Shown here piece after piece: positions 6,165 through 51,197 of a DNA stretch of 64,000 bases. Each line of letters begins with the position of its first letter. Position 1 is the first letter of the stretch. Below the pieces are notes generated by a model. It was given only the letters and a program-made list of their open reading frames with translations, did no database searches and was not told the origin of the DNA. The position numbers were made by a program, and so were the translations under genes. This DNA is from Macrostomum lignano. Its lineage: Eukaryota. Where the stretch lies: contig NIVC01000901.1 of the NCBI GenBank assembly GCA_002269645.1, forward strand, positions 62,001-126,000, in the 5' to 3' direction.

Positions 6165-6950
6165 ACCGTGTTTAATTCCCCGTGGATAATTCCCCTATCT
6201 TCATTCCCCTGTATTCATTCCCCTGTCATCATTCCCCTGTCTCATTCCCCTGCTTCACACCCCTGTCTTAATTCCCCTCTCTCATTCCCCTGTCTCATTC
6301 CTCTGTCTAATTCCCCTGCTTCACATTCCTGTCTTAATTCCCCTATCTTCATTCCCCTGTATTCATTCCCCTGTCATCATTCCTCTGTTTCATTCCCCTG
6401 TCTCACTCCCTGTCTGTCTTCATTCCCTGTCTCATTCCCCTGTCTCATTCCCCTGTCTCATTCCCCTGTCTCATTCCCCTGTCTCATTCCCCTGTCTCAT
6501 TCCCCTGTCTCATTCCCCTGTCTCATTCCCCTGTCTCATTCCCCTGTCTCATTCCCCTGTCTCATTCCCCTGTCTCATTCCCCTGTCTCATTACCCTGTC
6601 TCATTCCCCTGTCTCATTCCCCTGTCTCATTCCCCTGTCTCATTCCCCTGTCTCATTCCCCTGTCTCATTCCCCTGTCTCATTACCCTGTCTCATTCCCC
6701 TGTCTCAGTCCCTGTCTGTCTTCATTCCCCTGTCTCATTCCCCTGTCTCATTCCCCTGTCTCATTACCCTGTCTCATTCCCCTGTCTCAGTCCCTGTCTG
6801 TCTTCATTCCCCTGTCTCATTCCCCTGTCTCATTACCCTGTCTCATTCCCCTGTCTCAGTCCCTGTCTGTCTTCATTCCCCTGTCTCATTCCCCTGTCTC
6901 ATTCCCCTGTCTCATTCCCCTGTCTCATTCCCCTGTCTCATTCCCCACTC
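6165..6950 (+). repeat. 13-bp minisatellite TCATTCCCCTGTC
   Basis: Direct reading. Confidence 0.93.
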
Positions 6951-7215
6951 TAATTCCCACAGCCCGCTGCCTTACAATCTCAATCCTGATCGATTATTCT
7001 TCAATCGCATTTCCTGCAAAGCTTGCCAGCCAACATCCTTGTTATTAATGTCAGCATGCATCTGTTATCAATACCATCAGGCCCAATCTGAACGAACTTA
7101 TACAGTGCCTCAGAGTCTCTGCTCAGATGTGTTTTTGACGATGAAGTTTTTTTGTGTTGACTTTGCTGCTATCTCGAGGAGCGAATCTGCTGCAAGCCCC
7201 CTCTCTCTCTCTCTC

Positions 7216-7249
<34 letters not shown>

Positions 7250-7275
7250 CCTCTCTCTCTCGTTCAGAGCCTCAC

Positions 7276-7442
7276 CAATTGTTGTTATCAGAGTCGTGGA
7301 GAAATAGAAGGCATTGACGAAACTCCATTGATTTCCGCCAGCTTTGTAAGGCTTCGTCTGGAGTATGAGCTCGGTGATGTTCTCGTAGTCAGCTTCCGTG
7401 ATGTTGTACAAAACCTTCCAAGCTCTCTCTTTGTATTCGAGT
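7276..7442 (-). CDS. KCNK3/KCNK9-like: TASK-type K2P channel, exon 2 (cap helices and pore helix 1)
   Basis: ccag|A acceptor completes the phase-2 codon; encodes LEYKERAWKVLYNITEADYENITELILQTKPYKAGGNQWSFVNAFYFSTTLITTI; G|gtgagg donor. 167 nt, frame-consistent with both neighbours. Confidence 0.93.
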
Positions 7443-7504
7443 CTGGAAGGTGGTCGAGCGGTTGGCTAAAGTTTTGGATTAAGGATTCTTAATTCCTTAA
7501 AAAT

Positions 7505-7770
7505 TGAGAGAGAGAAAGACGAGGGTGAGAGGGGAGGGGAGAGGGAGGGTGAGAGGGGAGGGTGAGAGGGAGGGTGAGAGGGGAGGGTGAGAGGGAGGGT
7601 GAGAGGGGAGGGTGAGAGGGGAGGGGGAGAGGGGAGGGTGAGAGAAGAGGGGTAGAGGAGGTGGAGAAAGAGGGGTAGAGGAGGTGGAGAAAGAGGGGTA
7701 GAGGAGGTGGAGAAAGAGGGGGAGAGGAGGGGAGGGGAGAGAAGGGAGTGAGAAGAGAGGAAGGAGGGAG
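7505..7770 (+). repeat. GA-rich degenerate repeat in K2P intron 1
   Basis: GAGGGTGAGAGGG and GAGGAGGTGGAGAAAGAGGGGTA units. Confidence 0.85.
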
Positions 7771-8748
7771 ATATGCGGGAATGCAGAATACTGTTAATTT
7801 CTGACACTCAGCGCCTGGAAAACAATCGTCTGTTCAGAAAAAAACACGCATTGTACTCGTAAAACGTTGCACAATCGCAGGAACTCAACTTGAAGCAAAT
7901 AAATGCTCAAGAATCTCCAATCCCTTGATTACAATTTTTCCTCTTTCCCATTTCTTGATCTGCTCTCTCCGTTTTCGCCTAGAACAAGAAGAAGACGTTT
8001 GGGAAGACTTAAAAAGCAGCACTGATCCCCGCGCGGCGGCCTACGGCAAATATTCCGGCAAGTCGCTCGCTTGAGGTCAGACAGCTCCAGGGACGCGAGC
8101 TGGGAAAGGGGGGGGGGCTGTTTTGGGGAGAAGCCGACTCTGAGCACGAACGGTGCGAGACGAGCTCCGCATTTATTGATTTTTACAGCGCAACGGGAGG
8201 GGTAGGGGATCGGGTCCTCATTCCTTTTTTAATTTTTATAGCTTGTTGGTTGCTGTAAAACTGAGGGTGGTGTGGGGTGAGGATTGGAGCCCGCTTTCAC
8301 TGCGACTGACTGGGAATTTCAATGACTCCGTGTTTGACTTGTGCTCTCCTTGCTGTCTGCTGTCCTCTCTCGCTTCTTCTCTTTCTATTCGCTCTTGTCT
8401 CATATATGTCCTATCTAATCCCTAATCTGTAATCTCTTCTCTCTCTCTCCTCTCTAATCTCTTAGCACTAATCTCGAATCACTTCTCCTTTATCTTCAAT
8501 CTCTCTCTTTCCCTCTCTCATCTATTATGTCTCATCTCTCATCTCTAATAAATAATCTCTCGTCGCTCCTCTCTTTTGTCTAGTCGCTAATCTCTATAAT
8601 ATCTCTTATCTCTCATTTCTCATTTCAAATCCATAATATCTCACCGCTAGCTTCACTCTTTTCTCATCAATTTTCTATCTACTTTTTTTTCATTCCTTCT
8701 CCCTCCACCCTCACCTATCATATTTCACCGGTTTCATATCTCATATCT

Positions 8749-8784
<36 letters not shown>

Positions 8785-9159
8785 TCTTTCCTACTTTCCC
8801 CATAAAAATTATTATTTTAACCCATCCAGATCGTCGTCGAAGCACTTAATAAAATCGCTTTTTATAGAACAGCTACCGGGGGTGTCGCTGTAAAACAAAA
8901 AAGAAATAAATCGACATTAAAAATTCAAATATAGGGACAAATTAGATTTTTAAAAAAAATTTTTATATTTTTATGATCTCCCACTGTCTGCTTGATGATT
9001 TTTCATAGCGAAAAAAAGGTTTTAACGCGGAAAAATCTTTTATTTAAATCTGTAACGGTCGAACAGAACACAGAACAGAATTAACCGCTATAATGATATA
9101 CCAACTGGACGACAAAGACTTGAGACTATATGACCCAATAAAGTCTATGAGTATAAACC

Positions 9160-9492
9160 ACAAAGACTACACAAAATGACCAACAAAGACTACACAAAAT
9201 TACCAACAAAGACTACACAAAATGACCAACAAAGACTACACAAAATGACCAACAAAGACTACACAAAATGACCAACAAAGACTACACAAAATGACCAACA
9301 AAGACTACACAAAATGACCAACAAAGACTACACAAAATGACCAACAAGGACTACACAAAATGACCAACAAAGACTACACAAAATTACCAACAAAGACTAC
9401 ACAAGATGACCAACAAAGACTACACAAAATGACCAACAAAGACTACACAAAATGACCAACAAAGACTACACAAGATGACCAACAAAGACTAC
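9160..9492 (+). repeat. 23-bp minisatellite AAAGACTACACAAAATGACCAAC
   Basis: Direct reading; starts just downstream of the K2P exon 1 donor. Confidence 0.95.
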
Positions 9493-9520
9493 GAAACGAA
9501 CAACAATAAACAAAGACTCA

Positions 9521-9682
<162 letters not shown>

Positions 9683-10009
9683 TTAGAAATTAAAATTCGA
9701 CGATCATAACGTCAACCTGCAAAAAAGACAAAGGAAAAATTAATAAGAAATTTAAAAAAAATTAACATAAAGGCCGAGAAGATTTGGTTGCTATGGAAAC
9801 AGTGACGCCTTTCCAGGTGCAGCTTGGAACTCAAATCCAACAATGAAGGATTAGTTCCTCTTCCGTATAGGGAATATTTAAACAAAAAAACAAATAAGTA
9901 AAGAGATGAGACTGAGATGCCGACATGACAATGTATTTTGTAACAGAATTTGCAATAGAGAAATTTCATAAGTACCAACTTGTAAGTTGAGGCTTTCTTT
10001 TCGAAAAGA

Positions 10010-10885
10010 AGACAGGGAGGCAGACAGGGTGAGAGGGAGACAGACAGGGTGAGAGGAAGACAAAGAGAGTGAGAGGGAGACAGACAGTGTGAGAGGGAGA
10101 CATAAAGGGTGAGAAGGAGACATAAAGGGTGAGAGGGAGACATAAAGGGTGAGAGGGAGACATAAAGGGTGAGAGGGAGACATAAAGGGTGAGAGGGAGA
10201 CATAAAGGGTGAGAGGGAGACATAAAGGGTGAGAGGAAGACAGACAGGGTGAGAGGGAGATAGACAGGTTGAGAGGGAGACAGACAGGGTGAGAGGGAGA
10301 CAGACAGGGTGAGAGGAAGACAAAGAGAGTGAGAGGGAGACAGACAGTGTGAGAGGGAGACATAAAGGGTGAGAAGGAGACATAAAGGGTGAGAGGGAGA
10401 CATAAAGGGTGAGAGGGAGACATAAAGGGGGAGAGGGAGACATAAAGGGTGAGAGGGAGACATAAAGGGTGAGAGGGAGACATAAAGGGTGAGAGGAAGA
10501 CAGACAGGGTGAAAGGGAGATAGACAGGTTGAGAGGGAGACAGACAGGGTGAGAGGGAGACAGACAGGGTGAGAGGGAGACAGACAGGGTGAGAGGGAGA
10601 TAGACAGGGTGAGAGGTAGATAGACAGGGTGAGAGGGAGACAGACAGGTTGAGAGGGAGATAGACAGGGTGAGAGGGAGACAGACAGGGTGAGAGGGAGA
10701 CAGACAGGGTGAGAGGGAGACAGACAGGGTGAGAGGGAGACAGACAGGGTGAGAGGGAGACAGACAGGGTGAGAGGTAGATAGACAGGGTGAGAGGGAGA
10801 CAGACAGGGTGAGAGGGAGACAGACAGGGTGAGAGGGAGACAGACAGGGTGAGAGGGAGACAGACAGGGTGAGAGGGAGACAGAG
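10010..10885 (+). repeat. 20-bp minisatellite GAGAGGGAGACAGACAGGGT
   Basis: Direct reading. Confidence 0.95.
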
Positions 10886-24941: not shown

Positions 24942-26524
24942 TTGGCCCAGCAACTGAGGATCTGGGAGGCTGGCCCAGCAACTGAGGATCTGGGAGGCTG
25001 GCCCAGCAACTGAGGATCTGGGAGGCTGGCACAGCAATTGAGGATCTGGGAGGCTGGCACAGCAATTGAGGATCTGGGAGGCTGGCACAGCAATTGAGGA
25101 TCTGGGAGGCTGGCACAGCAATTGAGGATCTGGGAGGCTGGCACAGCAATTGAGGATCTGGGAGGCTGGCACAGCAATTGAGGATCTGGGAGGCTGGCTT
25201 AGCAACTGAGAATCTGGGAGGCTGGCTTAGCAACTGAGGATCTGGGAGGCTGGCCCAGCAACTGAGGATCTGGGAGGCTGGCTTAGCAACTGAGGATCTG
25301 GGAGGCTGGCTTAGCAACTGAGGATCTGGGAGGCTGGCCCAGCAACTGAGGATCTGGGAGGCTGGCATAGCAACTGAGGATCTGGGAGGCTGGCCCAGCA
25401 ACTGAGGATCTGGGAGGCTGGCCCAGAAACTGAGGATCTGGGAGGCTGGCCCAGCAACTGAGGATCTGGGAGGCTGGCACAGCAATTGAGGATCTGGGAG
25501 GCTGGCACAGCAATTGAGGATCTGGGAGGCTGGCTTAGCAACTGAGGATCTGGGAGGCTGGCTTAGCAACTGAGGATCTGGGAGGCTGGCTTAGCAACTG
25601 AGGATCTGGGAGGCTGGCCCAGCAACTGAGGATCTGGGAGGCTGGCTTAGCAACTGAGGATCTGGGAGGCTGGCTTAGCAACTGACACTCTGGGAGGCTG
25701 GCCCAGCAACTGAGGATCTGGGAGGCTGGCCCAGCAACTGAGGATCTGGGAGGCTGGCCCAGCAACTGAGGATCTGGGAGGCTGGCCCAGCAACTGAGGA
25801 TCTGGGAGGCTGGCTTAGCAACTGAGGATCTGGGAGGCTGGCCCAGCAACTGAGGATCTGGGAGGCTGGCCCAGCAACTGAGGATCTGGGAGGCTGGCCC
25901 AGCAACTGAGGATCTGGGAGGCTGGCACAGCAATTGAGGATCTGGGAGGCTGGCACAGCAATTGAGGATCTGGGAGGCTGGCACAGCAATTGAGGATCTG
26001 GGAGGCTGGCACAGCAATTGAGGATCTGGGAGGCTGGCACAGCAATTGAGGATCTGGGAGGCTGGCACAGCAATTGAGGATCTGGGAGGCTGGCCTGCAA
26101 CTGAGAATCTGGGAGGCTGGCTTAGCAACTGAGGATCTGGGAGGCTGGCCCAGCAACTGAGGATCTGGGAGGCTGGCTTAGCAACTGAGGATCTGGGAGG
26201 CTGGCTTAGCAACTGACACTCTGGGAGGCTGGCCCAGCAACTGAGGATCTGGGAGGCTGGCCCAGCAACTGAGGATCTGGGAGGCTGGCCCAGCAACTGA
26301 GGATCTGGGAGGCTGGCCCAGAAACTGAGGATCTGGGAGGCTGGCCCAGCAACTGAGGATCTGGGAGGCTGGCACAGCAATTGAGGATCTGGGAGGCTGG
26401 CACAGCAATTGAGGATCTGGGAGGCTGGCACAGCAATTGAGGATCTGGGAGGCTGGCCTGCAACTGAGAATCTGGGAGGCTGGCCCAGCAACTGCATGAG
26501 GATCTGGGAGGATGGCACAGCAAC
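24942..26524 (-). repeat. 28-bp minisatellite, array 2 (reverse complement of array 1)
   Basis: Unit AACTGAGGATCTGGGAGGCTGGCCCAGC on the plus strand. Confidence 0.96.
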
Positions 26525-27817
26525 TGGGGGTGTATACAGAGTGCTGATGGAGTTACGGAAATTATTCTGCACTCTATGGAACACACAATCGCTCAGATAA
26601 AAGAAATCAGACCAGAAGATTAAAGGCAGCTTCACAAAAATCAATTACAGAATTTCATGTTTACAAAACACACCTGCATTTTTATTCTAACAAAACCCGC
26701 TGGCCGAGCTGAACAAAGTCAGGCATAACTGTCCACTAAGAAAGAGTAGCAGACAATATTACGATTCATAGCAAACATAATAGAGTAAAATGTTACAATA
26801 AAAATGACACACAAAGTTATGAAAACATGCAGGTATTTAAAAAACTGCTACATATCGTGATTGATTTTATTACAATAGAAAACTCATGCTTATTAAACAG
26901 TGCTTAAAGACATACAAGGCAAATGCAGCAGAATTATTAGAACAAGAAATTCCCCCCTCCCAGTCAATTGAAGCGCTCGAGTGTGCGCTTCAGGAAATTG
27001 AAGGCAATTTGTTGGAACTTTTACTCTTCCAGAATCCTTCCTTCTTCTTCATCATTATTAGCGGGAGTACCTGGATTTGCGCACAGACTGGGCTGCGCTG
27101 GCAATTACCGTGGAAAAAAATTTCCTCTGGTAAAAATCTCTTCTCAATCTTCTCCAAAAAAGCAGATCGGCTCGGCCTTGAAGCCAGTTCTCCAGTCTTT
27201 CAATCTAGACTAGAAAATTGCGACAAATTGCCAGAGACAGAGAAATTCGAGTGGCCAGCAGAAGCGACAAGACAAGACTTGAAGCACTTTTGCATTTCTA
27301 AAGACGAGAGAGCACAAGATTTTCTACGCAGTTAAGCGCGAGAAGAGAAATTTAAACAACAAAGCAAATCATACTACTTGTAGCAGCAGAAATTGAATTT
27401 TATAATATTTTTCTGCAAGGGATTTTAAGACTAAGACGAGATGTTGTCAATCGAAAAAATCCTATTTTAGAGAACAAGCGTGCAGTGGACAGAAGTCAAG
27501 CCTAAGAGCGACTGGCGATTTCCTTCTTTCTCTGATCTTTACAACATCGAAAACCTACATGTATAGAATGCTTTTCTCAGGATGTGTTGCTCGATTTCAA
27601 GACATTGCATCGGCATGAACACTTGTCGGACTTACAGGACTAAACATTTCGTTCCTTTGCAGTCTTACCTAAAAAGCTAACTAGCAAAAATATTTTTTTT
27701 CTCTTACGAGTATACACTGTTAACTACTCTTAGTAGAACCACATAGAAATAAAGAGAGCGAATGAAGCAACACAGGAAAACTGATGCGTGTCTTTTTAAA
27801 AAAAACAATAGTTGCAG

Positions 27818-28640
27818 CGGCCCAGCAACTGAGGAGCTGGGACGCTGGCCCAGCAACTGAGGATCTGGGAGGCTGGCCTAGCAACTGAGGATCTGGGAGG
27901 CTGGCCTAGCAACTGAGGATCTGGGACGCTGGCCCAGCAACTGAGGATCTGGGAGGCTGGCCTAGCAACTGAGGATCTGGGAGGCTGGCCCAGCAACTGA
28001 GGATCTGGGAGGCTGGCCCCAGCAACTGAGGATCTGGGAGGCTGGGCCAGCAACTGAGGATCTGGTAGGCTGGCCCAGCAACTGAGGATCTGGGAGGCTG
28101 GCCCAGCAACTGAGGATCTGGGAGGCTGGCCCAGCAACTGAGGATCTGGGAGGCTGGCCCAGCAACTGAGGATCTGGGAGGCTGGCCCAGCAACTGAGGA
28201 TCTGGGAGGCTGGCCCAGCAACTGAGGATCTGGGAGGCTGGCCCAGAACTGGGGATCTGGGAGGCTGGCTCAGCAACTGAGGATCTGGGAGGCTGGCCCA
28301 GCAACTGAGGATCTGGTAGGCTGGCCCAGCAACTGAGGATCTGGGAGGCTGGCCCAGCAACTGAGGATCTGGAAGGCTGGCCCAGCAACTGAGGATCTGG
28401 GAGGCTGGCCCAGCAACTGAGGATCTGGGAGGCTGGCCCAGAACTGGGGATCTGGGAGGCTGGCTTAGCAACTGAGGATCTGGGAGGCTGGCCCAGCAAC
28501 TGAGGATCTGGTAGGCTGGCCCAGCAACTGAGGATCTGGGAGGCTGGCCCAGCAACTGAGGATCTGGGAGGCTGGCACAGGAACTGCGCGAGGATTTTGG
28601 AGGCTGGCCCAGCAACTGAGGATTTGGGAGGCTGGCCCAG
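27818..28640 (-). repeat. 28-bp minisatellite, array 3 (same orientation as array 2)
   Basis: Direct reading; ends about 110 bp from the ALKBH3-like stop codon. Confidence 0.96.
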
Positions 28641-28750
28641 CCGCTCGCTGTCATTTTGATAGAATCACGCCTGTCAGCAACACCCCCACCCACTCTATCA
28701 TCGCGCCAGCTCTCTCGCTTTGCATCCCAGACAGACAACAATCGGCCAGT

Positions 28751-29114
28751 TCATTTCCCAGTCCGTTTCGAACCGCCCGACCCGGTCACAATGGTGCGGA
28801 AAGTGAGATTAATCCTGGGTCCGCAACTGGCGGACTGCCGGCCGATCCTGTGCTGCCAGTCCTTCTGGATGGAGCCGCAGGTGTACAGCAGAGAGCCGGC
28901 AGACAGGGGCACGTGGACGGAGCGGAATCCTTGAATCTGTTGGCCGAAGACCACTCCGCCGATGCCGCCGCCACCGCCGAAGCCCTGCTGAGCGACGTCA
29001 AATCGGCGCAACTCAAAGAGTCGACTGGCGCCGAAACTGACGCTGGCGATGGCCGGATTCGAACCCATCTCGCGTTCGTTGTCGGAGTGCCACGGCATCG
29101 AGTCGTTGTGGTCT
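28751..29114 (-). CDS. ALKBH3-like: C2H2 zinc finger-ALKBH3-like fusion protein, exon 3 (catalytic 2OG-Fe(II) core)
   Basis: ctcag|A acceptor; DHNDSMPWHSDNEREMGSNPAIASVSFGASRLFELRR...WQHRI...RINLTFRT gives the HxD...H triad and R-x5-R motif of the AlkB family; TGA at 28751-28753. The three exons sum to 1404 nt = 467 aa plus stop. Confidence 0.92.
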
Positions 29115-29119
29115 CTGAG

Positions 29120-30062
29120 GTGTGTTTATCAGGGTGTTTATCAGAGACTAGCGAGTTTTGGGGTGTTTATCAGAGACTAGCTAGTTTTGGGGTGTTTATC
29201 AGGGATTATCGAGTCAGGTGTTTATCTGGGATTATCGAGTTTTGGAGTGTTTATTGGGGATTAATGAATTTTGAGGTGTTAATCTGGGATTAGCGAGTTT
29301 TGGAGGTGTTTTTCTGGGATTAGCGAGTTTTGGGGGGTGTTTATCTGGGATTAGCGAGTTTTGGAGTGTTTATTGGGGATTAATGAGCTTTGAGGTGTTT
29401 ATCTAGGATTAGCGAGTTTGGAGGTGTTTATCTAGGACTAGCGAGTTTTGGAGGGTGTTTATCTGGGATTAGCGAGTTTTGGGGTGTTTTTCTGGGATTA
29501 GCGAGTTTTGGAGAGTTTATTGGGGATTAATGAGTTTTGAGGTGTTTATTGGGAATTAATGAGTTTTGAGGTGTTTATCTGGGATTAGCGAGTTTTGGAG
29601 GTGTTTATCTAGGACTAGCGAGTTTTGGGGGGTGTTTATCTGGGATTAGCGAGTTTTGGAGTGTTTATTGGGGATTAATGAGTTTTGAGGTGTTTATTGG
29701 GAATTAATGAGCTTTGAGGTGTTTATCTAGGATTAGCGAGTTTGGAGGTGTTTATCTAGGACTAGCGAGTTTTGGAGGGTGTTTATCTGGGATTAGCGAG
29801 TTTTGGGGTGTTTTTCTGGGATTAGCGAGTTTTGGAGAGTTTATTGGGGATTAATGAGTTTTGAGGTGTTTATTGGGAATTAATGAGTTTTGAGGTGTTT
29901 ATCTGGGATTAGCGAGTTTTGGAGGTGTTTATCTAGGACTAGCGAGTTTTGGGGGGTGTTTATCTGGGATTAGCGAGTTTTGGGGTGTTTTTCTGGGATA
30001 AGCGAGTTTTGGGGGTGTTTATCTGGGATTAGCGAGTTTTGGGGGGTGTTTATCTGGGATTA
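29120..30062 (+). repeat. About 29-30-bp minisatellite GTGTTTATCTGGGATTAGCGAGTTTTGGAG filling intron 2 of the ALKBH3-like gene
   Basis: Direct reading. Confidence 0.93.
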
Positions 30063-30115
30063 TCAGCGCTGTTTGAGGAACGATGTAGTTAGCCACCCTG
30101 TCTCCTCATACTCAC

Positions 30116-30960
30116 CTGTACAGAATTGCCAAGCAGGCGTTAAACGTCACTTTATCCTCAAGCGCCCGTTCAACATCCTGTTTAATCTGCATCAGCGCTG
30201 GATGCCAATTAGAATTCTCGGGCAGGTGCACCGAGCCGTAGGAATATTTCGGCCCAACCCAGTACGTCATCCTTGGCTCAGTGGATTCGCCTTTGCCACC
30301 TGGCTTGGGCCGAGTTTTCAGCTGCTCCCACGCCAGTTCAGTGGCCAGAGTATTAAAAGTTTGGCTGGCAGCTTCAGACGAATAGAATGCCGGATCGAAC
30401 CGAAGCCGAGCCTCTAAGCCGCCTCGGCTAACGCTGATGACGTAATCGCCCTTATCTCGGACAACCAGATCCGGCTGCATCACGCCGCCAAACTGCTGTT
30501 GCCGAACTCCTTGACCTTGGCTCCAGTTCGGCCGCAATCGTTTCTGCATCAAATGCACCGGCTGCATCGGGCCACCGATTGGGCGACGGTTGAACCCCGG
30601 CTGCATCAGCGAGACTGCTGACGATTGGCCACCGGCTCCGAATTGGCGTTTGCGACTGAACTGCTGCTGGTGATGCTTCATCTGCTGGTTATTGGTGTTC
30701 TTCTCGCTAGCCCAGGCTCGCTTCCCACCGCCGACAGAGCCGGCGTTAGTTGTCCACTTTGTTGAGAATTCCTCATCTCTGCTGTAGTCAGTGCCATCGG
30801 CGCCTGTTGCAGCCTCCTCTTCATCAATGTCAGCTTCCTCTTGCTTTTGTTGCTGCTCTTCATCATCGCCATTGTCGCTGTCTGTTCGGCAGTTCAGAAA
30901 TAATTCTTCCACTTTTTGAATGACCACAGTCTTGTCCGGGTGGTGAACTTCGCTGTGCTC
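30116..30960 (-). CDS. ALKBH3-like: C2H2 zinc finger-ALKBH3-like fusion protein, exon 2
   Basis: Pyrimidine-rich cgcag|GAG acceptor supplies EHSEVHH that completes finger 2; then acidic and Q/G-rich linker; then the ALKBH3-like segment EPRMTYWVGPKYSY...NWHPALMQIK...TFNACLAILYR; AG|gtgagt donor. Confidence 0.88.
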
Positions 30961-31049
30961 CTGCGCGGTGAGGAGGGAGCGGGGCCCGAATAGTGTCCTG
31001 AGTTCGATTCCTAGTCTACTCACTTTTGTAAGATTCTGAGGGACCATTA

Positions 31050-31880
31050 CTTTGAGTCTGAGAGTCCACTATTGTGAGTCTGAAAGTCCTCCATTGAGAG
31101 ATTCTTAGTCCACTATTGAGATGCTGAGTCCACTATTGTCAGATTTAGAGAGTCCAATATTGTGACATTTTAAGAGTCCACTATTGAGATTCTGAGAGTC
31201 CATTGTGAGATTCTGAGAGTCTACTGTTGTGAGATTCTGAGAGTCCATTCTCGAGATTCTGAGAGTCCACTATTGTGCGATGCTGAGTGTACGCTATTGA
31301 GATGCTAAGAGTCCACTATTGAGATGCTGAGAGTTCACTATTGAGAAGCTGAGAGTCTACCATGGAGATACTGGGAGTCCACTATTGAGATACTGGGAGT
31401 CTACTATTGAGATGCTGAGAGGCTACTATTGATATGCTGGGAGTCTACTATTGAGATGCTGAGAGGCTACTATTGAGATGCTGAGAGGCTACTATTGAGA
31501 TGCTGGGAGGCTACTATTGAGATGCTGAGAGGCTACTATTGAGATGCTGGGAGTCTACTATTGAGATGCTGAGAGGCTACTATTGAGATGCTGAGAGGCT
31601 ACTATTGAGATGCTGAGAGGCTACTATTGAGATGCTGAGAGGCTACTATTGAGATGCTGAGAGGCTACTATTGAGATGCTGAGAGGCTACTATTGAGATG
31701 CTGGGAGTCCACTATTGTGGGATTCTCAGTGTCCAATGTTGTTACATTCTGAAAATCCGCTATTGAGATGCTGATGATCTACTATTGAGATTCTGAGTGT
31801 CCGCTATTGCTGAGAGTCGACTATTGTAACATTCTCAGAGTCCACTGTTGTGAGATTCCGAGAGTCCACTGTAGAGATAT
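31050..31880 (+). repeat. 22-bp minisatellite CTACTATTGAGATGCTGAGAGG in intron 1 of the ALKBH3-like gene
   Basis: Direct reading; homogeneous centre, degenerate edges. Confidence 0.92.
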
Positions 31881-32006
31881 CTTGAGTCCTAATTCTAACT
31901 CTATTAAATTTGAAATATTACAGTAAAGCAACCAGTATTCAGCGACCCACAAAAAGCAACAATACGGCTACGAGCAAAAAAGCAGAAAAGTACACAGAGC
32001 ACTAAC

Positions 32007-32201
32007 TTGAAGCAGATACTCGCTAGAGCAGAGCAGCTCGCACTCGCTGCATTTGTACACTACAAACTCGATGTCCCGCTCGGGATGGCCTATGGCATGC
32101 TCGGATAGGCGTGAGAAATAAGTAGTAAAAAATTTGCACAAAGGACAATCGAATAGCAGAACTCGCTCTGGCTCGAAATTGATGTCGCTCTCAGCTTCCA
32201 T
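32007..32201 (-). CDS. ALKBH3-like: C2H2 zinc finger-ALKBH3-like fusion protein, exon 1 (finger 1 and most of finger 2)
   Basis: First ATG after an in-frame upstream stop; CPLC-x12-H-x3-H, then CSEC-ELLCSSEYLLQ ending at a CAA|gttagt donor (phase 0). Confidence 0.8.
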
Positions 32202-33307
32202 GATGAAGACGGCGTAATGCGCTGATGAATCTCGAACTTAATAGTTGAAAAGTGAGTTGTTTCGAGAGAAAGCAAAATTTCGGGATTTCGCTGTGAGCTG
32301 AAGATGAAACAAATTTGAATTGGCGCCAGAATGTTATTTCTGTATTTGTTTAACCGGTTTGTTACGGATTGAAGCCGGAGAGATTCTTACTGGGGGGGGG
32401 GGCGCGCACTTCACTTTCTATTTTAGTCTAAGCAATAACAATTTGAATTGGCGCCAAAATTCTCAATTCGATAGTTTGTTAAAATAGTTAACTAATTTGT
32501 TTAAACCCGGAGAAATTCCCTATTTGAAAATAGTTTGACCCGGGGCCCTTGAGTGTGTCTTGTTATAATGATAAGTTTGAATTGATGCTAAATATTGCTA
32601 TTTTGTTTAACCGACTGACTAAAAAAACCCAGAGAAAAATTCTATAGAGTTGTGAGCACTTGGCTTTATTAAAGTGGAGCTATTATTCATGTTAAAGTTT
32701 TCTTAATGACTTTTGCTATAGGCTGGCTAACTAAAATTATAACAAAATATTCTAACAAATTTCCTACCAAAACATGCATTTCTTACTACTCAGTGAAAGT
32801 CTACTAAGTAGTAGGACGCTGGACATTCCGTGCTATTTAGCCATATTTAATTGGGTTATCATCGTTTTCAGTGGGAGTTTTTTTATGTTGTCCATCATTT
32901 TTGCTCACAATTAGGCACACACACACAGACAGACAGATAGGTTAATGTAACAATTGCAAACTTTGCGCTAGTCAAGCAGTTGTTGTTTGTTTCTAACAAA
33001 AAAACTAAATTAAAAACACAAAGAAACCCTAGTAGACATTGGGGACAAAAACTGACCTGGGCAGTTTCTTAACTGACAAAGCCAATATGATAAGATCATA
33101 GATGGATCAGAATTGCAAGCAATAAATCCACACAAACTTATTCAATGGAAACCAATAGGAATGCGACTACATTATATAACAATAAAAAATAGTGACGATA
33201 TAACACTTAGTAATTAAATTTAATAATATAGAATTAATAGAAGGGGATGGAACACACACAGACACATTTATAATATGGAGATTGCAGCAGCACAAAGAGT
33301 CAAAAAT

Positions 33308-34091
33308 TCAAACTGGTCTCCAACGGTTCATTGCGGGCTGGCCTGATTCAAACATTGTCGGCCTTGGCGGAGGCGGCTGCTGCTGCTGATGATGCTGCAT
33401 GGGTCCTTGAGGAGGCGGCGGAGCAGCATGACGATAGGGTGAGAACACTTGCTGCTGTTGCATAAACTGCTGCTGCTGCTGCTGCTGCTGCCGGAAGGCC
33501 GGGAAAAACGGAGGCGGAGGCGGCAACGGAGGAGGCGGTCGAACCCCGCCACCTGTTGGCGACGTAGCCGCTGGCTGACTACTACTAACACTACTGTTAG
33601 TATTACTATGATTACTACTCATACTCATAATAGATGCATTGTTGCCGCTATTATTCAGCGAGTTCATTGACGGCATCGGCAGTGGCGGTGGCGGCAGAGG
33701 CGGAGGCTGCAGTCGAGGCCGCCAGACCGGCAGGTGCTGCGGCATCCAGCTGTCGATGGAGCTGGCCGTGATTGGCAGCTGGTGGCCGGGCGCCGAGACG
33801 GCGGCAGTGGTGACGGCGGTGGCAGCGGTGGCCCCGCCAATGCGCTCATCGAGAGTTGGAGTGGCGCTCCGGCCGGATTGCTGCTTTTGCTGCTTCTGCG
33901 GCTGCTGATGCTGGTGAGCAGCAGACCGAGGCGGCGGCGGACTGTCGGAGCCGATGGCGATCTCGTGGCGATGGTGCTGCTGATGATGATGATGATGATG
34001 CTGGTGCTGGTGATGCTGAGTTGATGAAGAGTGCCGATGAGCGCTGCCTTCTCGGCCGCTGCTGATGGAACGTGACGGACTGCGAGAGGAT
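33308..34091 (-). CDS. RPRD2-like: RPRD2-like protein, exon 6 (S/R-, His-, Gln- and Pro-rich low-complexity tail)
   Basis: cacgcag|A acceptor completes the phase-2 codon and enters the frame of ORF 33308-34276; TGA at 33308-33310. The six exons sum to 1887 nt = 628 aa plus stop. Confidence 0.8.
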
Positions 34092-34174
34092 CTGCGTGGG
34101 GATTTCAGATGCGAATGATTTGATGTCTTTTGCTCCGCTTTTTGACACGGCATGGATATAGGGAGGGTAGTGCA

Positions 34175-35005
34175 ATAAAAACACCCTGGGAAACAGGGTG
34201 GTCCAAAAACTCCTTGAGCTTTGGTGGTCCAGTAAAAATATAATGGAAAGTAGGGTAGGGTGGTACAAAAACACACCTTCTAGGAAATAGGGTGGACAAA
34301 AATAATACGAGCGTAAAAAAAACGATAGAAAACAGGTTGGTCCAATAAAAGCACCCTCGGAAAAGGGTGGTCCATAAAAAACCCTGGGAAAAAGGATGGC
34401 CCAATAAAAACACCCTGGGAAGCAGGGTAGTCCAATAAAAACACCCTGGGAAGCACGGTGGTCCAAAAACTCCTTGAGCTTTGATGGTCCAGTAAAAATA
34501 TAATGGAAAGTAGGGTAGGGTGGTACAAACACATACCTTCTAGGAAATAGGGTGGACAAAAATAATAAAAATAACCGATAGAAAACAGGGTGGTCCAATA
34601 AAAACACCCGGGGAAACAGGGTGGTCCAATAAAAACACCCGGGGAAAAAGGGTGGTCCAATAAAAACACCCGGGGAAACAGGATGGTCCGATAAAAAACC
34701 CAGGGAAAAAGTATGGTCTAATAAAAACACTATGGGAAAAGGGTGGTCCAATAAAAACACCCTGGGAAGTAGGGTGGTCCAATAAAAACACCCTGGGAAG
34801 CAGGGTGTTCCAATAAAAACACCCTGGGAAGTAGGGTGGTCCAATAAAAACACCCTGGGAAGCAGGGTGGTCCAATAAAAACACCCTGGGAAACAGGGTG
34901 GTTCAATAAAAACACCCTGGGAAGCAGGGTGGTCCAATAAAAACACCCTGGGAAGTAGGGTGGTCCAATAAAAACACCCTGGGAAGTAGGTAACAAATAA
35001 AAACA
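34175..35005 (+). repeat. 32-bp minisatellite AAAAACACCCTGGGAAGCAGGGTGGTCCAATA in RPRD2-like intron 5
   Basis: Direct reading; includes a duplicated block of about 250 bp. Confidence 0.92.
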
Positions 35006-35132
35006 CCATGAAATGGGTGGCGTGAAGCACAGTATGATTAAGAAGAGGGTGGCCCAATAAAAAAGACAGCAGACAAAGAAACTGTGTTTTGTTTAACACT
35101 CGTTTAGTTTTTTTTTCAATTTCAGAACCCAC

Positions 35133-35779
35133 CTAGAAGATCGCTTTCGACTGTTGCCGCTCTTGCCGCTAACCGGTGCCCGATCACGATGCCCGACGCT
35201 GCCGGCGCCTCCGCTACTTCCGCTGTGTCGCCTGTGCTTCCGGTGCCTGCGTTTGCTGCTCTGCTGCTGCTGGTGGTGCACGGCAGCCCCCTGGCCGTTC
35301 TCATCTCCGCTATCGATCTCCATCTCATCCTCGCGTCGGCTTAGAACGGCTACTTCTGCGCCAAAATCGTCGGCCGTGTCAGCTGGCGGCGACGGCGCCT
35401 CGGGCGAGTCAACAAGTCGATCTTCAACTCGTCGACGCATAAAAGCGACCATCTCGCCGTATTTTTTATAGGCTGTCACGACAACATTAACGTCGGAATA
35501 TTGAGCGGCAAAGAACATGTGAGCTTTTTCTAGTAGCGACAGTAGCGCCTCTCTACGCTCTTCCAGGCGTTCTAAATCGCGGACAAGATCTTCGAGTCGT
35601 TGGCAGGATTCTTCAAGCTGCTGACGATAGGCCTCGCCGTGGGAGCGATCTTTGATCTGGCGTACAGCAGCTGGACTGTGAATCTCTGAGGAGATCATGC
35701 AGCCTAGCTGGCGCTCCTTTGACGCCGTGTCAGTCTCCATGATGAGGAACTCTTTTAGGGCGGAGATGACCGAGTCAGG
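35133..35779 (-). CDS. RPRD2-like: RPRD2-like protein, exon 5 (coiled-coil/CREPT-like region)
   Basis: ccacag|CCT acceptor; PDSVISALKEF...FFAAQYSDVNVVVTAYKKYGEMVAFMRRRVEDRL...SPEAPSP resembles RPRD2 (EQYKEVKVVANAYK...PSP); AG|gtggg donor. Confidence 0.88.
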
Positions 35780-35854
35780 CTGTGGATTAAATATGGCGGT
35801 GAAAGATCAGAATCTTGCCTGCTTATGTCTGACTTTGACCCCTCTTCTAACTGC

Positions 35855-36180
35855 TTTCTCATTGGCTAAGCTAAATTGGGCCTGCCCCCTAGGCTGAGTT
35901 TTGTCCGTCTCTCCTTGCTGCTCTCTTATTGGCTGAGCTAGATTGGGCCTTACCCCCTAGACTGAGTTTTGTCCGTCTCTCCTTGCTGCTCTCTCATTGG
36001 CTGAGCTAGATGGGCCTGATCCCCTAGACTGAGTGAGTAATGTCCGTCTCTCCTTGCTGCTCTCTAATTGGCTGAGCTAGATTAGGCCAGACCTCTAAGC
36101 TGAGTTTTGTCCGTCTCTCCTTACTGCTGTCTCATTGGCTGAGATAGATTGGACCTGCCCATGGGCTAAATTTCGTCCGT
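35855..36180 (+). repeat. About 66-70-bp tandem repeat, 5 copies, in RPRD2-like intron 4
   Basis: Recurrent CTCTCATTGGCTGAGCTAGATTGGGCC...GAGTTTTGTCCGTCTCTCCTTGCTG. Confidence 0.85.
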
Positions 36181-49943: not shown

Positions 49944-51197
49944 ATGTCGCACAGCCGATTTTGGTTAATGCTTTCTGTTACCATGGTAATACTCAATCAA
50001 TCTGTTCATTCCAAGAGAGATTATCAAATAGAATTGATGAAGTATCTGAAGAACAACATCACGGACTACAGTCCGATAGTTCGGCCAGTGTTGGACCCGG
50101 ACCAGGTGATGCTATTCAATTTCACCTTTCTGCTCAGCCAAATTGTAGCTGTGGACAGCGCTAAGCAGACTGTCAAGATATCCGCTTACCTTCAGGCTGG
50201 CTGGACCGAGGAGCGGCTGGTCTGGGATCCGGCCGATTTTGGAAACGTGACTGTCATGGACTGGGACTCCAGTCAAATCTGGTTCCCCGTGATTCTCATT
50301 TACAATGGCGTAGGCGACAACCAGCTGCTCAAGCCGCAGTTTCCCATAATCCTCACTTCCAGTTCGCCCAGGGCAACAGTTGCAGAGACAACCTGAGAGC
50401 AGGAATGGGAGTTCTCCTGCAAATTCGACATGAGCCTATTTCCATTCGACAAGCACGTCTGCGACATGGAACTGTTCTGCAGCGACCAAGGTCGGGGTCA
50501 CCATCTTCTCCAGCCTGCCATTGGCAACCCAATGAACAATGAGCTGGCGATTTACGTCGTTAATAGCGAGTGGAGACTATTGAATCTGAGCACATTCGTG
50601 CATCTGAGGTACTACGAGATGCTCAAGGGCCAGCCAAAGTTGCCGCTGCCAAGCTACGTTATTCGCATGACTGTCGAGCGCGTGTCCAACTACTATCTGC
50701 TGAACGTGGTGGCTCCCCTGCTGCTGCTAACGCTGCTCCAGTTGCTGATTTTCATCGTGCCAGTCGAGTCCGGAGAGAAGCTGGGCTTCGGCATCACCAT
50801 CATGCTGAGCTACACGGTGTTCCTGCTGCTGCTGGACGGCCTGCTGCCCAAGTCGCAGTCAATGCCGGCCGTGGCGTCCTTCATCACGGCGGCCATGGTG
50901 CTGTCGTCGCTGTCCCTGCTGCTCACGTCCGTCGTGATTCGATTCCACTTCGCTGCGGACACCCAGTCGATGCCGCCGTGTCTCCGTCTCGTGTTCGTGA
51001 CCTGCCTGGGACGCCTGCTGTGCACCTCCACCAGCGACTCGAAGGTGGACGTCGGTGTCGAGGGCGCTCATCGACCGAGCCGCTCCGACTGGGTGGTGGC
51101 GGCGCTGGCCCTGGAGAGGCTGATGGCTTTGGTTGGCAGCGTTGCCATCGTTGTCATCTTTCTTGGGTATCTGCTGGCTCCGTTCGCAACTCACTGA
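49944..51197 (+). CDS. Intronless divergent Cys-loop ligand-gated ion channel subunit (nAChR-like, non-alpha) interrupted by one in-frame TGA at 50394-50396; possible pseudogene, read-through gene or sequencing error
   Basis: ORFs 49944-50396 and 50430-51197 are in the same frame, separated only by the TGA. Signal peptide, SPIVRPV, WFPVILIYN (loop A), C-x13-C loop CKFDMSLFPFDKHVC, four TM helices, SGEKLGFGITIML at M2, MX and MA-like helices. Confidence 0.9.

What the first reader, a model, noticed from the sequence alone, without database searches (positions are those of the whole stretch)
28751..32201. C2H2 zinc finger pair fused to an ALKBH3-like demethylase through a disordered linker
Seen in sequence: three exons join in frame, and the second zinc finger is only complete after splicing (CSEC-ELLCSSEYLLQ|E-HSEVH), which supports the junction. 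The product is ZnF-ZnF, an acidic tract (DDEEQQQKQEEADIDEEE), a Q/G/R-rich low-complexity segment, then an AlkB domain with HxD...H and R-x5-R. Established: human ALKBH2/3 are single-domain enzymes, and ALKBH3 is brought to alkylated nucleic acid by the ASCC complex. I know of no ALKBH3 carrying C2H2 fingers. Inference: a self-targeting m1A/m3C demethylase that uses its own fingers and a condensate-prone linker to choose DNA or RNA substrates.
Basis: partly seen in the sequence, partly recalled or inferred. Interest (0 to 1): 0.8.

Follow-up and report, generated by a model that had tools for sequence, protein, structure and literature searches.

The report
Flatworm ALKBH3 enzyme with zinc fingers
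This is a real, already-annotated gene of the flatworm Macrostomum lignano in which an ALKBH3-type nucleic-acid demethylase carries a compact pair of zinc fingers at its front end; the combination is conserved in a small family of related proteins but has not been described or studied.

Summary
Three minus-strand exons (32201-32007, 30960-30116, 29114-28751) join in frame through GT/AG introns. The 467-aa product is 100% identical to GenBank PAA75129.1 (Macrostomum lignano BOX15_Mlig021096g1), a model derived from RNA-seq.

The C-terminal domain is an intact ALKBH3-type Fe(II)/2-oxoglutarate dioxygenase: HxD...H and R-x5-R are present, and human ALKBH3 is the best sequence and structure match.

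The two N-terminal C2H2 fingers are real. AlphaFold2 predicts them as one compact domain (pLDDT 82).

The fusion is not unique. A second M. lignano paralogue group encodes fingers plus AlkB in single intron-free ORFs, and two contigs from unidentified eukaryotes encode three fingers plus AlkB. The fingers are homologous across all of these. Nemertean, snail, echinoderm and vertebrate ALKBH3 lack them.

The finger module is acidic (pI about 5), lacks typical base-contact residues and has long linkers, so a protein-docking or adaptor role is at least as likely as nucleic-acid reading. The basic Q/G/R segment (pI about 12) is the better candidate for nucleic-acid contact.

ALKBH3 fused to other targeting domains (PHD, SRA, AT-hook) is already published. 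Verdict: a new variant of a known kind, of moderate interest.

The parts
32007..32201 (-). Exon 1: start codon, residues 1-65; contains finger 1 and the N-terminal two thirds of finger 2
   Evidence: in-frame TAA at 32238-32240 upstream; donor GTTAGT at 32006
32085..32147 (-). C2H2 finger 1 (C19-P-L-C22 ... H35-A-I-G-H39)
   Evidence: pattern; all four ligands invariant across five family members; beta-beta-alpha in the AF2 model
32007..32051 (-). C2H2 finger 2, part encoded by exon 1 (C51-S-E-C54 ... Q65)
30940..30960 (-). C2H2 finger 2, part encoded by exon 2 (E66-H67-S-E-V-H71-H72); completes the finger only after splicing
   Evidence: H67 and H72 invariant in the family
30961..32006 (-). 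Intron 1 (1046 nt, phase 0, GT...AG), mostly a 22-nt minisatellite (31058-31878, about 37 copies)
30116..30960 (-). Exon 2: residues 66 to 347 (first two bases of codon 347)
30766..30882 (-). Acidic tract (residues about 92-130, DDEEQQQKQEEADIDEEE...)
   Evidence: segment 76-135: 20 D+E, pI 4.05
30466..30750 (-). Basic Q/G/R-rich low-complexity segment (residues 136-230, pI 12.0). It contains KRAWAS, which aligns with the (R)VQGxWA motif at the N-terminus of ordinary ALKBH3
   Evidence: pLDDT below 50 in the AF2 model
30116..30465 (-). AlkB (2OG-FeII_Oxy_2) domain, N-terminal part (residues 231-347)
   Evidence: Pfam PF13532 88.8 bits; ALKBH3 best PDB match
29115..30115 (-). Intron 2 (1001 nt, phase 2, GT...AG), mostly a 29-nt minisatellite (29132-30062, about 32 copies, higher-order period 295-324)
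28751..29114 (-). Exon 3: residues 347-467 and TGA stop; AlkB domain C-terminal part
29081..29089 (-). Fe(II) ligands H356-S-D358 (CAC TCC GAC)
28850..28852 (-). Third Fe(II) ligand H435 (CAC)
28796..28816 (-). 2-oxoglutarate-binding R447-I-N-L-T-F-R453 (R-x5-R)

Best explanation
This is a genuine, transcribed M. lignano gene (BOX15_Mlig021096g1). It encodes the species' ALKBH3-clade Fe(II)/2-oxoglutarate dioxygenase.

**Catalytic domain.** By homology, residues about 231-458 oxidatively remove methyl groups such as m1A and m3C from single-stranded DNA or RNA. This is inferred from intact catalytic residues and ALKBH3-like sequence and fold; it has not been assayed.

**Added N-terminal module.** An ancestor of a lineage that includes Macrostomum added a compact domain of about 80 residues built from two non-classical C2H2 fingers. 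It was placed in front of an otherwise complete ALKBH3, including that enzyme's basic N-terminal tail. The module has been kept through at least one ancient gene duplication, so it is functional.

**Most likely role.** I think the finger domain is a built-in recruitment or adaptor domain that works through protein contacts, or through contacts with nucleic-acid structure that do not depend on base sequence. It would hard-wire a targeting step that human ALKBH3 obtains in trans from the ASCC complex. The basic Q/G/R segment would supply non-specific nucleic-acid affinity.

**Shown:** gene model, architecture, conservation, intact catalytic motifs, predicted folds.
**Inferred:** enzymatic activity, substrate, and what the fingers bind.
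For: **Gene model**
- Canonical junctions and an in-frame CDS.
- Identity to PAA75129.1 and about 99% identity to two other annotated copies.
- Mlig_3_7 gene models are built from RNA-seq (StringTie/TACO/TBONE), not ab initio (PMC5730564).

**The fusion is real without relying on splicing**
- Paralogue locus L006 has two intron-free ORFs (6007-7200 and 9474-10535), each encoding ZnF1-ZnF2-linker-AlkB.
- L002 is a continuous 436-aa ORF with three fingers plus AlkB.
- L003 reconstructs with canonical introns placed elsewhere.

**The fingers are homologous across members**
- BLASTP of the N-termini alone gives E 1e-5 to 6e-11.
- Window versus L003 aligns collinearly over 444 aa at E 3e-55.
- All eight zinc ligands are invariant.

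**ALKBH3 identity**
- PF13532 at 88.8 bits.
- PDB ALKBH3 E 5e-34 against ALKBH2 1e-13.
- Foldseek target-normalised TM 0.86-0.94 to ALKBH3.
- HxD...H, R-x5-R, N339 and Y346/R347 are conserved.
- The AlkB tree places the protein inside metazoan ALKBH3.

**Finger domain fold**
- AF2 mean pLDDT 82, pTM 0.70; two beta-beta-alpha units plus three extra strands.

**Protein-docking rather than base-reading**
- Module pI 5.1-6.5 in four of five members; finger 2 net charge -4 to -5 in three of five (window, L002, L003).
- Contact positions Y/S/R/E and S/Y/L/E; 10-11-residue spacer.
- Nearest Pfam models are the ZHX, ZNF462, ZNF451 and SUZ12 types.
- Precedent: TRIP4 docks on ASCC3 through a zinc finger, in competition with ALKBH3 (PMC10076317).

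**Lineage restriction**
- Nemertean, snail, nematomorph, echinoderm and vertebrate ALKBH3 are 243-443 aa and have no fingers.
Against: - I inspected no RNA-seq reads or cDNA for this locus. Transcript support is indirect, through the published annotation pipeline.
- No enzymatic data exist for any family member.
- The window protein's fingers are below Pfam thresholds.
- The first full-length AF2 run gave pLDDT below 50 for residues 1-219. The confident N-terminal model rests on a 4-sequence alignment.
- Monophyly of the finger-bearing AlkB domains has only 35% bootstrap support.
- C2H2 fingers with neutral or acidic surfaces can still bind nucleic acid. Finger 3 of the L002 protein just passes the threshold for the dsRNA-binding 'jaz' model (23.1 bits against 22.6). 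The ligand of the module is therefore open.
- The source organisms of L002 and L003 are unknown, so the taxonomic breadth is not established.
Confidence: 0.6

Rival explanations
1. The two fingers directly read DNA or RNA, by sequence or structure, and so steer the demethylase to chosen substrates ('self-targeting'), helped by a condensate-forming linker.
For: - They are C2H2 fingers, a fold most often used for nucleic-acid binding.
- The structural neighbours are all DNA-bound C2H2 arrays, although none is significant.
- Two-finger DNA binders exist, for example Tramtrack 2drp, which appears in the list.
- Finger 3 of the L002 homologue just passes the dsRNA-binding zf-C2H2_jaz threshold.
- Published ALKBH3-clade fusions are to DNA-binding modules (PMC4738411).
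- The adjacent segment 136-230 is very basic.
Against: - The finger module is acidic: pI 5.1, with 11 D+E against 5 K+R.
- Finger 2 has net charge -5.
- Canonical contact positions are Y/S/R/E and S/Y/L/E rather than R/K/N/Q/H.
- The inter-finger spacer is 11 residues, not TGEKP.
- The fingers are predicted to pack against each other into one globule rather than wrap a groove.
- The window protein lacks the third, jaz-like finger.
- Nothing in the data bears on condensates.
Confidence: 0.25
2. The protein has the architecture described but is not primarily an m1A/m3C repair demethylase. It has either drifted to another substrate (for example 6mA in DNA, or a protein) or acts mainly as a non-catalytic scaffold.
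For: - Iyer et al. proposed that domain-fused AlkBH3 and AlkBH5 clade members may demethylate 6mA in DNA (PMC4738411).
- The M. lignano group B paralogues have H-C-E in place of HxD and have lost the R-x5-R spacing, which shows that the family tolerates catalytic drift.
- The window protein has a Gly-rich insertion (residues about 389-411), absent from other ALKBH3 and modelled at pLDDT below 50 over residues 392-405.
Against: - The window protein keeps every Fe and 2OG ligand and the conserved N339, Y346 and R347.
- Its modelled core superposes on human ALKBH3 bound to 3mC ssDNA at target-normalised TM about 0.9.
- It appears to be the only catalytically canonical ALKBH3-clade gene recovered from M. 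lignano.
Confidence: 0.1
3. Gene-model artefact. The zinc-finger exon belongs to a separate upstream transcript (M. lignano has operons and spliced-leader trans-splicing), and the real ALKBH3 mRNA starts at exon 2.
For: - 38.8% of M. lignano genes are trans-spliced and about 7% of transcriptional units are polycistronic (PMC5730564).
- I saw no reads.
- An in-frame Met159 in exon 2 would give a 309-aa product of ordinary ALKBH3 size.
Against: - Finger 2 is completed exactly across the junction, with the spacing conserved family-wide.
- Exon 1 alone would encode a 65-aa peptide ending inside a finger.
- The same model was derived independently at three loci.
- Homologues encode fingers and AlkB in single uninterrupted ORFs.
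- A finger-less minor isoform is not excluded, but that would not make the fusion an artefact.
Confidence: 0.03

Closest known systems
Human ALKBH3 (PDB 2IUW, 8JNK, 8JNR, 9NCZ), the m1A/m3C demethylase of single-stranded DNA and RNA
   Same: - The catalytic domain is about 34-40% identical.
- HxD...H, R-x5-R and the N/Y/R 2OG-site residues are conserved.
- Best sequence hit (E 5e-34) and best fold hit (target-normalised TM 0.86-0.94).
- A basic, disordered N-terminal tail is also present, and the KRAWAS motif aligns with (R)VQGxWA.
   Different: - The flatworm protein has about 140 extra N-terminal residues: a double C2H2 domain plus an acidic tract.
- It has a much longer basic Q/G/R segment.
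- It has a Gly-rich insertion at about 389-411.
- The hairpin carrying the human R-E-D motif reads KPGGKGES here.
- The clade shares a GP-xYxY signature in place of GELPYTYS.
- Human ALKBH3 is recruited in trans by ASCC (PMC10076317).
ALKBH3-clade proteins fused to PHD fingers, SAD/SRA domains or AT-hooks (Iyer, Zhang & Aravind 2016, PMC4738411)
   Same: The principle is the same: an ALKBH3-clade dioxygenase covalently joined to a chromatin or nucleic-acid targeting module.
   Different: C2H2 fingers are not among the reported partners. I did not inspect the taxa and sequences of those fusions. The module here is a specific, conserved double finger that pairwise BLASTP finds homologous between members.
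[quoted passage not shown]
   Same: These are AlkB-family enzymes with an accessory N-terminal Zn-binding or RNA-binding domain (PMC4738411).
   Different: They belong to different AlkB clades. NMAD-1, ALKBH6 and FTO match the model only at Foldseek E about 1e-8 to 1e-10 and target-normalised TM 0.24-0.6, against 1e-22 and about 0.9 for ALKBH3.
Non-classical paired C2H2 fingers of the ZHX1, ZNF462, ZNF451 and SUZ12 types
   Same: These are the nearest Pfam models. They are below threshold for the window protein, but for the L002 homologue ZNF462-7th scores 35 bits and ZHX 34.5 bits against cut-offs of 27. The ZHX1 two-finger region (2ghf) appears among the structural neighbours.
   Different: No significant whole-module structural match exists (best E 0.05, TM about 0.3). 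The 'CxF(hydrophobic)T' finger 1, the H-P...(V/L)YKC spacer and the C-x2-C-x12-H-x4-H(P) finger 2 are family-specific.
TRIP4 zinc-finger docking onto the ASCC3 helicase (functional analogy only)
   Same: A zinc-finger domain is used to dock a factor onto the helicase that also serves ALKBH3. TRIP4 and ALKBH3 bind ASCC3 mutually exclusively (PMC10076317).
   Different: TRIP4's finger is a different zinc-finger type on a different protein. No evidence links the flatworm module to ASCC3.

Membership tests
AlkB family / ALKBH3 clade | 2OG-FeII_Oxy_2 (PF13532) domain above the curated threshold | tested here: met
   88.8 bits against a cut-off of 31.2, residues 255-453
AlkB family / ALKBH3 clade | Fe(II) triad HxD...H and 2OG-binding R-x5-R | tested here: met
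   H356, D358, H435, R447 and R453 are conserved in alignments with 25 and 7 homologues
AlkB family / ALKBH3 clade | Closer to ALKBH3 than to any other AlkB clade in sequence, fold and tree | tested here: met
   PDB phmmer: ALKBH3 5e-34 against ALKBH2 1e-13. Foldseek: ALKBH3 1e-22 to 1e-23 against ALKBH2 1e-16 and others 1e-8 or weaker. The protein nests within metazoan ALKBH3 in the NJ tree
AlkB family / ALKBH3 clade | Oxidative demethylation of m1A/m3C in single-stranded nucleic acid | not testable with these tools
   Needs recombinant protein and modified oligonucleotides
AlkB family / ALKBH3 clade | Conserved N-terminal basic motif K-R-x-R-x-R-V-Q-G-x-W-A of animal ALKBH3 | tested here: inconclusive
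   Only K145-R-A-W-A-S150 aligns with ...QGSWA.... The match is short and lies in a low-complexity region
C2H2 zinc finger | C-x2-4-C-x12-H-x3-5-H ligand pattern with a conserved hydrophobic residue at helix position +4 | tested here: met
   Two fingers, at residues 19 and 51. Finger 2 matches PROSITE PS00028. L at position +4 in both. The ligands are invariant in five family members
C2H2 zinc finger | Pfam C2H2-type model above the curated threshold | tested here: not met
   Window protein: best is zf-C2H2_4 at 18.7 bits against 27, and zf-C2H2 at 15.7 against 25.2. It is met in the homologous L002 protein: ZNF462-7th 35 bits, ZHX 34.5, zf-C2H2_4 27.3, jaz 23.1. UniProt labels one M. lignano copy 'C2H2-type domain-containing'
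C2H2 zinc finger | Beta-beta-alpha fold | tested here: met
   AF2 on a 4-sequence alignment gives mean pLDDT 82, with strand-strand-helix at residues 14-36 and 44-71. This is a prediction only
C2H2 zinc finger | Zinc binding | not testable with these tools
   Needs metal analysis of purified protein
Classical DNA-reading C2H2 array (Krueppel/TFIIIA type) | TGEKP-like 7-residue linkers and basic or polar residues at helix positions -1, +2, +3 and +6 | tested here: not met
   The spacer is H-PERDIEFVVYK-C (11 residues). Contact positions are Y,S,R,E and S,Y,L,E. Module pI is 5.1

The most novel reading that the evidence does not exclude
The conserved double-C2H2 domain may be a previously unrecognised, lineage-specific targeting device for an ALKBH3 eraser. 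It would either dock the enzyme directly onto a helicase or ribosome-quality-control factor, hard-wiring what ASCC does in trans in mammals, or recognise a particular RNA or DNA structure. In that case flatworms of this lineage would run a substrate-selective m1A/m3C (or 6mA) demethylation pathway rather than generic alkylation repair. The group B paralogues, which have an altered metal and 2OG site, would then be derived readers or decoys of the same targets.
Probability: 0.15. Interest if true: 0.65.

Novelty: new variant of a known kind. Interest (0 to 1): 0.4.

Why it matters
How ALKBH3 finds its substrates is a live question. In human cells it depends on the ASCC helicase complex, and the enzyme has been linked both to alkylation repair and to removal of m1A/m3C from RNA.

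A natural version of the enzyme with a conserved, covalently attached targeting domain offers a simple handle on that question. The partner of the finger domain, whether protein or nucleic acid, would point to the physiologically relevant substrate class.

M. lignano has working transgenesis, which makes tagging feasible. RNAi knock-down and alkylation-sensitivity tests are proposed on the basis of my own knowledge that such methods exist for this animal; I did not check that here.

The finding also carries a methodological point. The fingers are below Pfam thresholds, and prokaryote-style gene callers had truncated the N-termini of the two homologues from unidentified organisms. A routine domain-architecture search would therefore not reveal the family.

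If the module turns out to be only a generic stabilising or localisation appendage, this is an ordinary lineage-specific domain accretion.

Tried and rejected
1. **Exon versus intron divergence between the window and paralogous locus L001, as a selection test.** The copies are 97-99% identical everywhere. The three exon-1 differences are all synonymous, but the test has no power.
2. **Profile search with the finger module alone (A4).** Only 56 candidates were scored, and the single hit was the L003 finger-1 exon itself. Uninformative.
3. **Profile search with the mixed family alignment (A3).** It returned only M. lignano members and then generic ALKBH3/AlkB. It did not even return P0051 and P0064, so that index is incomplete for this purpose.
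4. **Full-length AF2.** The N-terminal 219 residues were below pLDDT 50 because the alignment had no depth there. This was resolved by a separate N-terminal run.
5. **Foldseek of the finger module against the PDB.** Only non-significant C2H2 arrays.
6. **Identifying the source organisms of L002 and L003.** The ERZ accessions appear in no paper. The extended locus L004 is flanked only by LTR retroelements.
7. **Looking for an intron-free transcript contig encoding exactly the window protein.** Only the genome records are on file.
8. **Literature search for the Mlig gene IDs.** Nothing found.
9. **A third loose C2H2 pattern at about 27560 on the + strand.** It lies in no meaningful ORF, so I treat it as chance.
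10. **Bacterial promoter/terminator scan of the 3' end.** Irrelevant to a eukaryotic gene, and nothing was found.
11. **L003 and L006 did not sync to the scripting machine.** I read them with the sequence and ORF tools instead.


Full report
**What is in the sequence**

On the minus strand, three exons (32201-32007, 30960-30116, 29114-28751) are bounded by canonical GT...AG introns. They join into a 1404-nt reading frame of 467 codons plus a stop. A TAA lies 13 codons upstream of the ATG, in frame, so the frame starts at 32201.

- Finger 1 (C19-x2-C22-x12-H35-x3-H39) lies in exon 1.
- Finger 2 begins in exon 1 (C51-S-E-C54...Q65) and receives its two histidines (H67, H71/H72) from the first seven codons of exon 2.
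- An acidic tract follows (residues 76-135: 20 D+E, pI 4.05).
- Next comes a Q/G/R-rich basic segment (residues 136-230: 16 Q, 14 G, 13 K+R, pI 12.0).
- The protein ends with an AlkB domain carrying H356-x-D358, H435 and R447-x5-R453.

The loose C2H2 pattern occurs only three times in about 128,000 six-frame residues of the window, and one of those is finger 1. Two properly spaced fingers, one of them completed across a splice junction, are therefore not a chance pattern.

**Identity of the gene**

The window comes from the flatworm Macrostomum lignano. The 467-aa model is 100% identical to GenBank PAA75129.1 (BOX15_Mlig021096g1, contig NIVC01000901.1). The annotated gene span of 3451 nt equals the finding's coordinates.

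Two further annotated copies are about 99% identical: Mlig015948g2 (469 aa) and Mlig016819g1 (468 aa). UniProt labels an older partial model (A0A1I8I2L6) 'C2H2-type domain-containing protein'.

The Mlig_3_7 gene models were produced from RNA-seq by genome-guided transcript assembly, with experimentally defined transcript boundaries (PMC5730564). I could not inspect reads, and no separate transcript contig is on record.

**The catalytic domain**

- Pfam finds only PF13532 (2OG-FeII_Oxy_2), at 88.8 bits against a cut-off of 31.2.
- Against solved structures, human ALKBH3 is the best sequence match (E 5e-34 over residues 222-458). ALKBH2 is far behind at 1e-13.
- An AlphaFold2 model built on 26 aligned sequences is confident over most of residues about 230-458: most 10-residue blocks average pLDDT 76-98, with dips to about 61 at 281-290 and about 40-56 at 391-410.
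- That model superposes on human ALKBH3, including the 3mC-ssDNA complexes, at target-normalised TM 0.86-0.94 and E about 1e-22. This is ahead of ALKBH2 (TM about 0.8, E about 1e-16) and well ahead of ALKBH6, FTO and NMAD-1.
- All iron and 2-oxoglutarate ligands, and the conserved N339 and Y346/R347, are retained.
- A Gly-rich insertion (residues about 389-411) is specific to this protein and is predicted to be disordered.

By homology, the protein should be an active oxidative demethylase of the ALKBH3 type. That conclusion is inference.

**The finger module**

Pfam does not call the fingers at threshold in the window protein. The best hits are zf-C2H2_4 at 18.7 bits and zf_C2H2_ZHX at 16.1 bits, both against cut-offs of 27.

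Three lines of evidence show that the fingers are real:
1. The exhaustive search of 1.84 billion representatives returned a beetle poly-zinc-finger protein that matches only residues 15-78 of the query.
2. The module is conserved in homologues (see the next section).
3. With an alignment of only four admissible sequences, AlphaFold2 predicts residues 1-89 at mean pLDDT 82 and pTM 0.70. The model has two strand-strand-helix units, and three further strands (14-18, 44-51, 79-87) pack the fingers into a single globular domain.

Foldseek finds only C2H2 arrays as neighbours (BCL11A, Kaiso, CTCF, ZHX1, Tramtrack), and none is significant as a whole (E at least 0.05, TM about 0.3). The individual fingers are therefore classical, but their mutual arrangement has no close solved counterpart.

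**The fusion is a family trait, not a one-off**

I scanned the 194 proteins retrieved up to that point, which included the top 150 hits of the representative search, for C2H2 patterns. Four further AlkB proteins with N-terminal fingers turned up.

- **Group B in M. lignano (P0076, Mlig021122g3; P0073, Mlig024840g2).** These form a second, divergent paralogue group, about 30% identical to the window protein in the AlkB domain. At the Mlig024840 locus (L006) there are two tandem, intron-free ORFs: 6007-7200 (397 aa) and 9474-10535 (353 aa). Each encodes finger 1, finger 2, a short linker and the AlkB domain without interruption. In that paralogue the fusion needs no splicing at all.
- **P0051.** It comes from an ENA assembly (ERZ3792534, L002). 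The deposited ORF was truncated by the gene caller. The frame is open from nt 80, with an upstream stop, and encodes 436 aa with three fingers and an intact AlkB domain on an intron-free contig.
- **P0064.** It comes from a 22.7-kb genomic contig (ERZ25070786, L003/L004). With canonical introns it reconstructs into a 406-aa protein with three fingers and an intact AlkB domain.

The N-terminal modules are significantly similar on their own (BLASTP E 1e-5 to 6e-11). Window versus L003 aligns collinearly from finger 1 to the end of the AlkB domain: 29% identity over 444 aa, E 3e-55. All eight zinc ligands, L32 and a downstream Asn (N88) are invariant. The spacer H-P...(V/L)YKC has a constant length of 10-11 residues.

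A neighbour-joining tree of the AlkB domains alone groups the finger-bearing proteins together inside metazoan ALKBH3:
- The whole group has weak support (35%).
- Window plus fragment P0048 has 100% support.
- L003 plus Mlig021122 has 100% support.
- L002 joins the latter pair at 98%.

A shared GP-x-Y-x-Y signature, in place of the GELPYTYS of other ALKBH3, also marks the group. The duplication into groups A and B therefore predates the split between M. lignano and the L003 organism, and both groups kept the fingers. This is the best evidence that the module is under selection.

The closest named finger-less relatives are ordinary ALKBH3 of 243-443 aa. They come from a nemertean, a snail, a nematomorph, echinoderms, amphioxus and vertebrates. 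The fingers were therefore added in a narrower lineage that includes Macrostomum.

The organisms behind L002 and L003 could not be identified. They are eukaryotic: L003 has spliceosomal introns and LTR retroelements beside the gene.

**What the fingers are likely to do**

The data do not favour simple base reading:
- The finger 1-2 module has pI 5.1 in the window protein and 5.4-6.5 in three of the four other members.
- Finger 2 has a net charge of -5.
- The canonical contact positions (-1, +2, +3, +6) carry Y,S,R,E and S,Y,L,E.
- The inter-finger spacer is 11 residues rather than TGEKP.
- The two fingers are predicted to pack together.
- The nearest Pfam models are the atypical ZHX, ZNF462, ZNF451 and SUZ12 fingers.

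The strongly basic segment 136-230 is the more plausible nucleic-acid contact. It includes a remnant (KRAWAS) of the basic N-terminal motif of ordinary ALKBH3.

In human cells ALKBH3 works with the ASCC3 helicase. TRIP4 docks on the same helicase through a zinc-finger domain, in competition with ALKBH3 (PMC10076317). This shows that a zinc finger can serve as a protein-docking device in this pathway. I therefore favour a built-in adaptor or recruitment role through protein contacts, but the ligand is open. Finger 3 of the L002 protein, which is absent from the window protein, just passes the dsRNA-binding 'jaz' threshold.

**Comparison with what is known**

[quoted passage not shown] They also reported that the AlkBH4 clade has an N-terminal Zn-binding domain (PMC4738411). 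An ALKBH3-type enzyme with a covalently attached targeting module is thus a known theme.

A C2H2 partner, and this particular double-finger domain, were not mentioned there or in any paper I could find. The proteins are in public databases as uncharacterised entries.

I class the finding as a new variant of a known kind.

**Verdict**

The architecture and ALKBH3 assignment are right, and the claim that the fusion is undescribed appears right. The uniqueness claim and the mechanism are not supported.
- Interest is moderate (0.4). The protein is a clean, conserved, experimentally tractable natural fusion that could tell us how ALKBH3 is targeted. It is not a new kind of system, and nothing yet shows what the fingers bind.

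Noticed in passing
window 29132-30062, 31058-31878, 27819-28641, 26000-26526, 34333-34990: Both introns of the gene consist largely of minisatellites: a 22-nt unit with about 37 copies in intron 1, and a 29-nt unit with about 32 copies and a 295-324-nt higher-order period in intron 2. Related 28-nt arrays (GGGAGGCTGGC.CAGCAACTGAGGATCT) lie in the 3' flank at 27819-28641 and again at 26000-26526. A 31-nt array lies in the upstream neighbour. The arrays produce long spurious ORFs in several frames.
   Followed up: partly
L006 6007-7200 and 9474-10535 (M. lignano NIVC01000625.1): The group B paralogue exists as two tandem intron-free copies, which looks retrogene-like. The deposited model P0073 (292 aa, 'partial', gene 6001-10347) appears to be a mis-join across the two copies.
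   Followed up: partly
L006 ORFs; P0076 residues about 630-700: Group B M. lignano proteins have H-C-E instead of the HxD iron motif and RRTSYTFSFR instead of R-x5-R. Their relative from another organism (L003) keeps HSD and RINFTFR. Group B in M. lignano may therefore be catalytically altered or inactive.
   Followed up: no
P0076 (Mlig021122g3) residues about 150-350: The 708-aa model contains a second, degenerate AlkB-like region between the fingers and the C-terminal AlkB domain (FAWSD in place of WHSD; weak BLASTP matches to L002 and L003). This is either an internal duplication or two merged genes.
   Followed up: no
L002 80-268; L003 2546-2661 and 2742-2795: Prokaryote-style gene calling truncated the N-termini of the two homologues from unidentified organisms and hid two of their three fingers. 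In addition, the fingers are below Pfam thresholds in M. lignano. A routine architecture search would therefore miss this family.
   Followed up: yes
window about 33000-36000, minus strand: The upstream neighbour on the same strand is an RPRD1-like gene (CID domain in the annotation; weak CREPT-domain hit in ORF 35093-35740, 24.5 bits against a cut-off of 29.3). The same neighbour precedes the paralogous copy in L001 and the window's own gene in record L005. With same-strand spacing of about 1 kb in a species with operons, co-transcription is possible.
   Followed up: no
window 53836-55779 and 60453-61529 (minus); 50430-51197 (plus): These are exons of a Slowpoke/BK calcium-activated potassium channel (RCK, Slowpoke_C, BK_channel_a, Ion_trans) and the transmembrane region of a Cys-loop ligand-gated channel.
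   Followed up: no
window exon 2, codon 159 (about 30679-30681): The first in-frame Met within exon 2 (M159) would give a 309-aa product of ordinary ALKBH3 size. If the exon-2 acceptor at 30960 can also accept a spliced leader, a finger-less isoform could coexist with the fused one (trans-splicing frequency from PMC5730564).
   Followed up: no
P0044 (Logan contig, 693 aa): An unrelated AlkB-family protein combines a NADAR (DUF1768) domain, a RanBP-type zinc finger and a C-terminal AlkB domain. This is another example of zinc-finger accretion onto AlkB enzymes.
   Followed up: no
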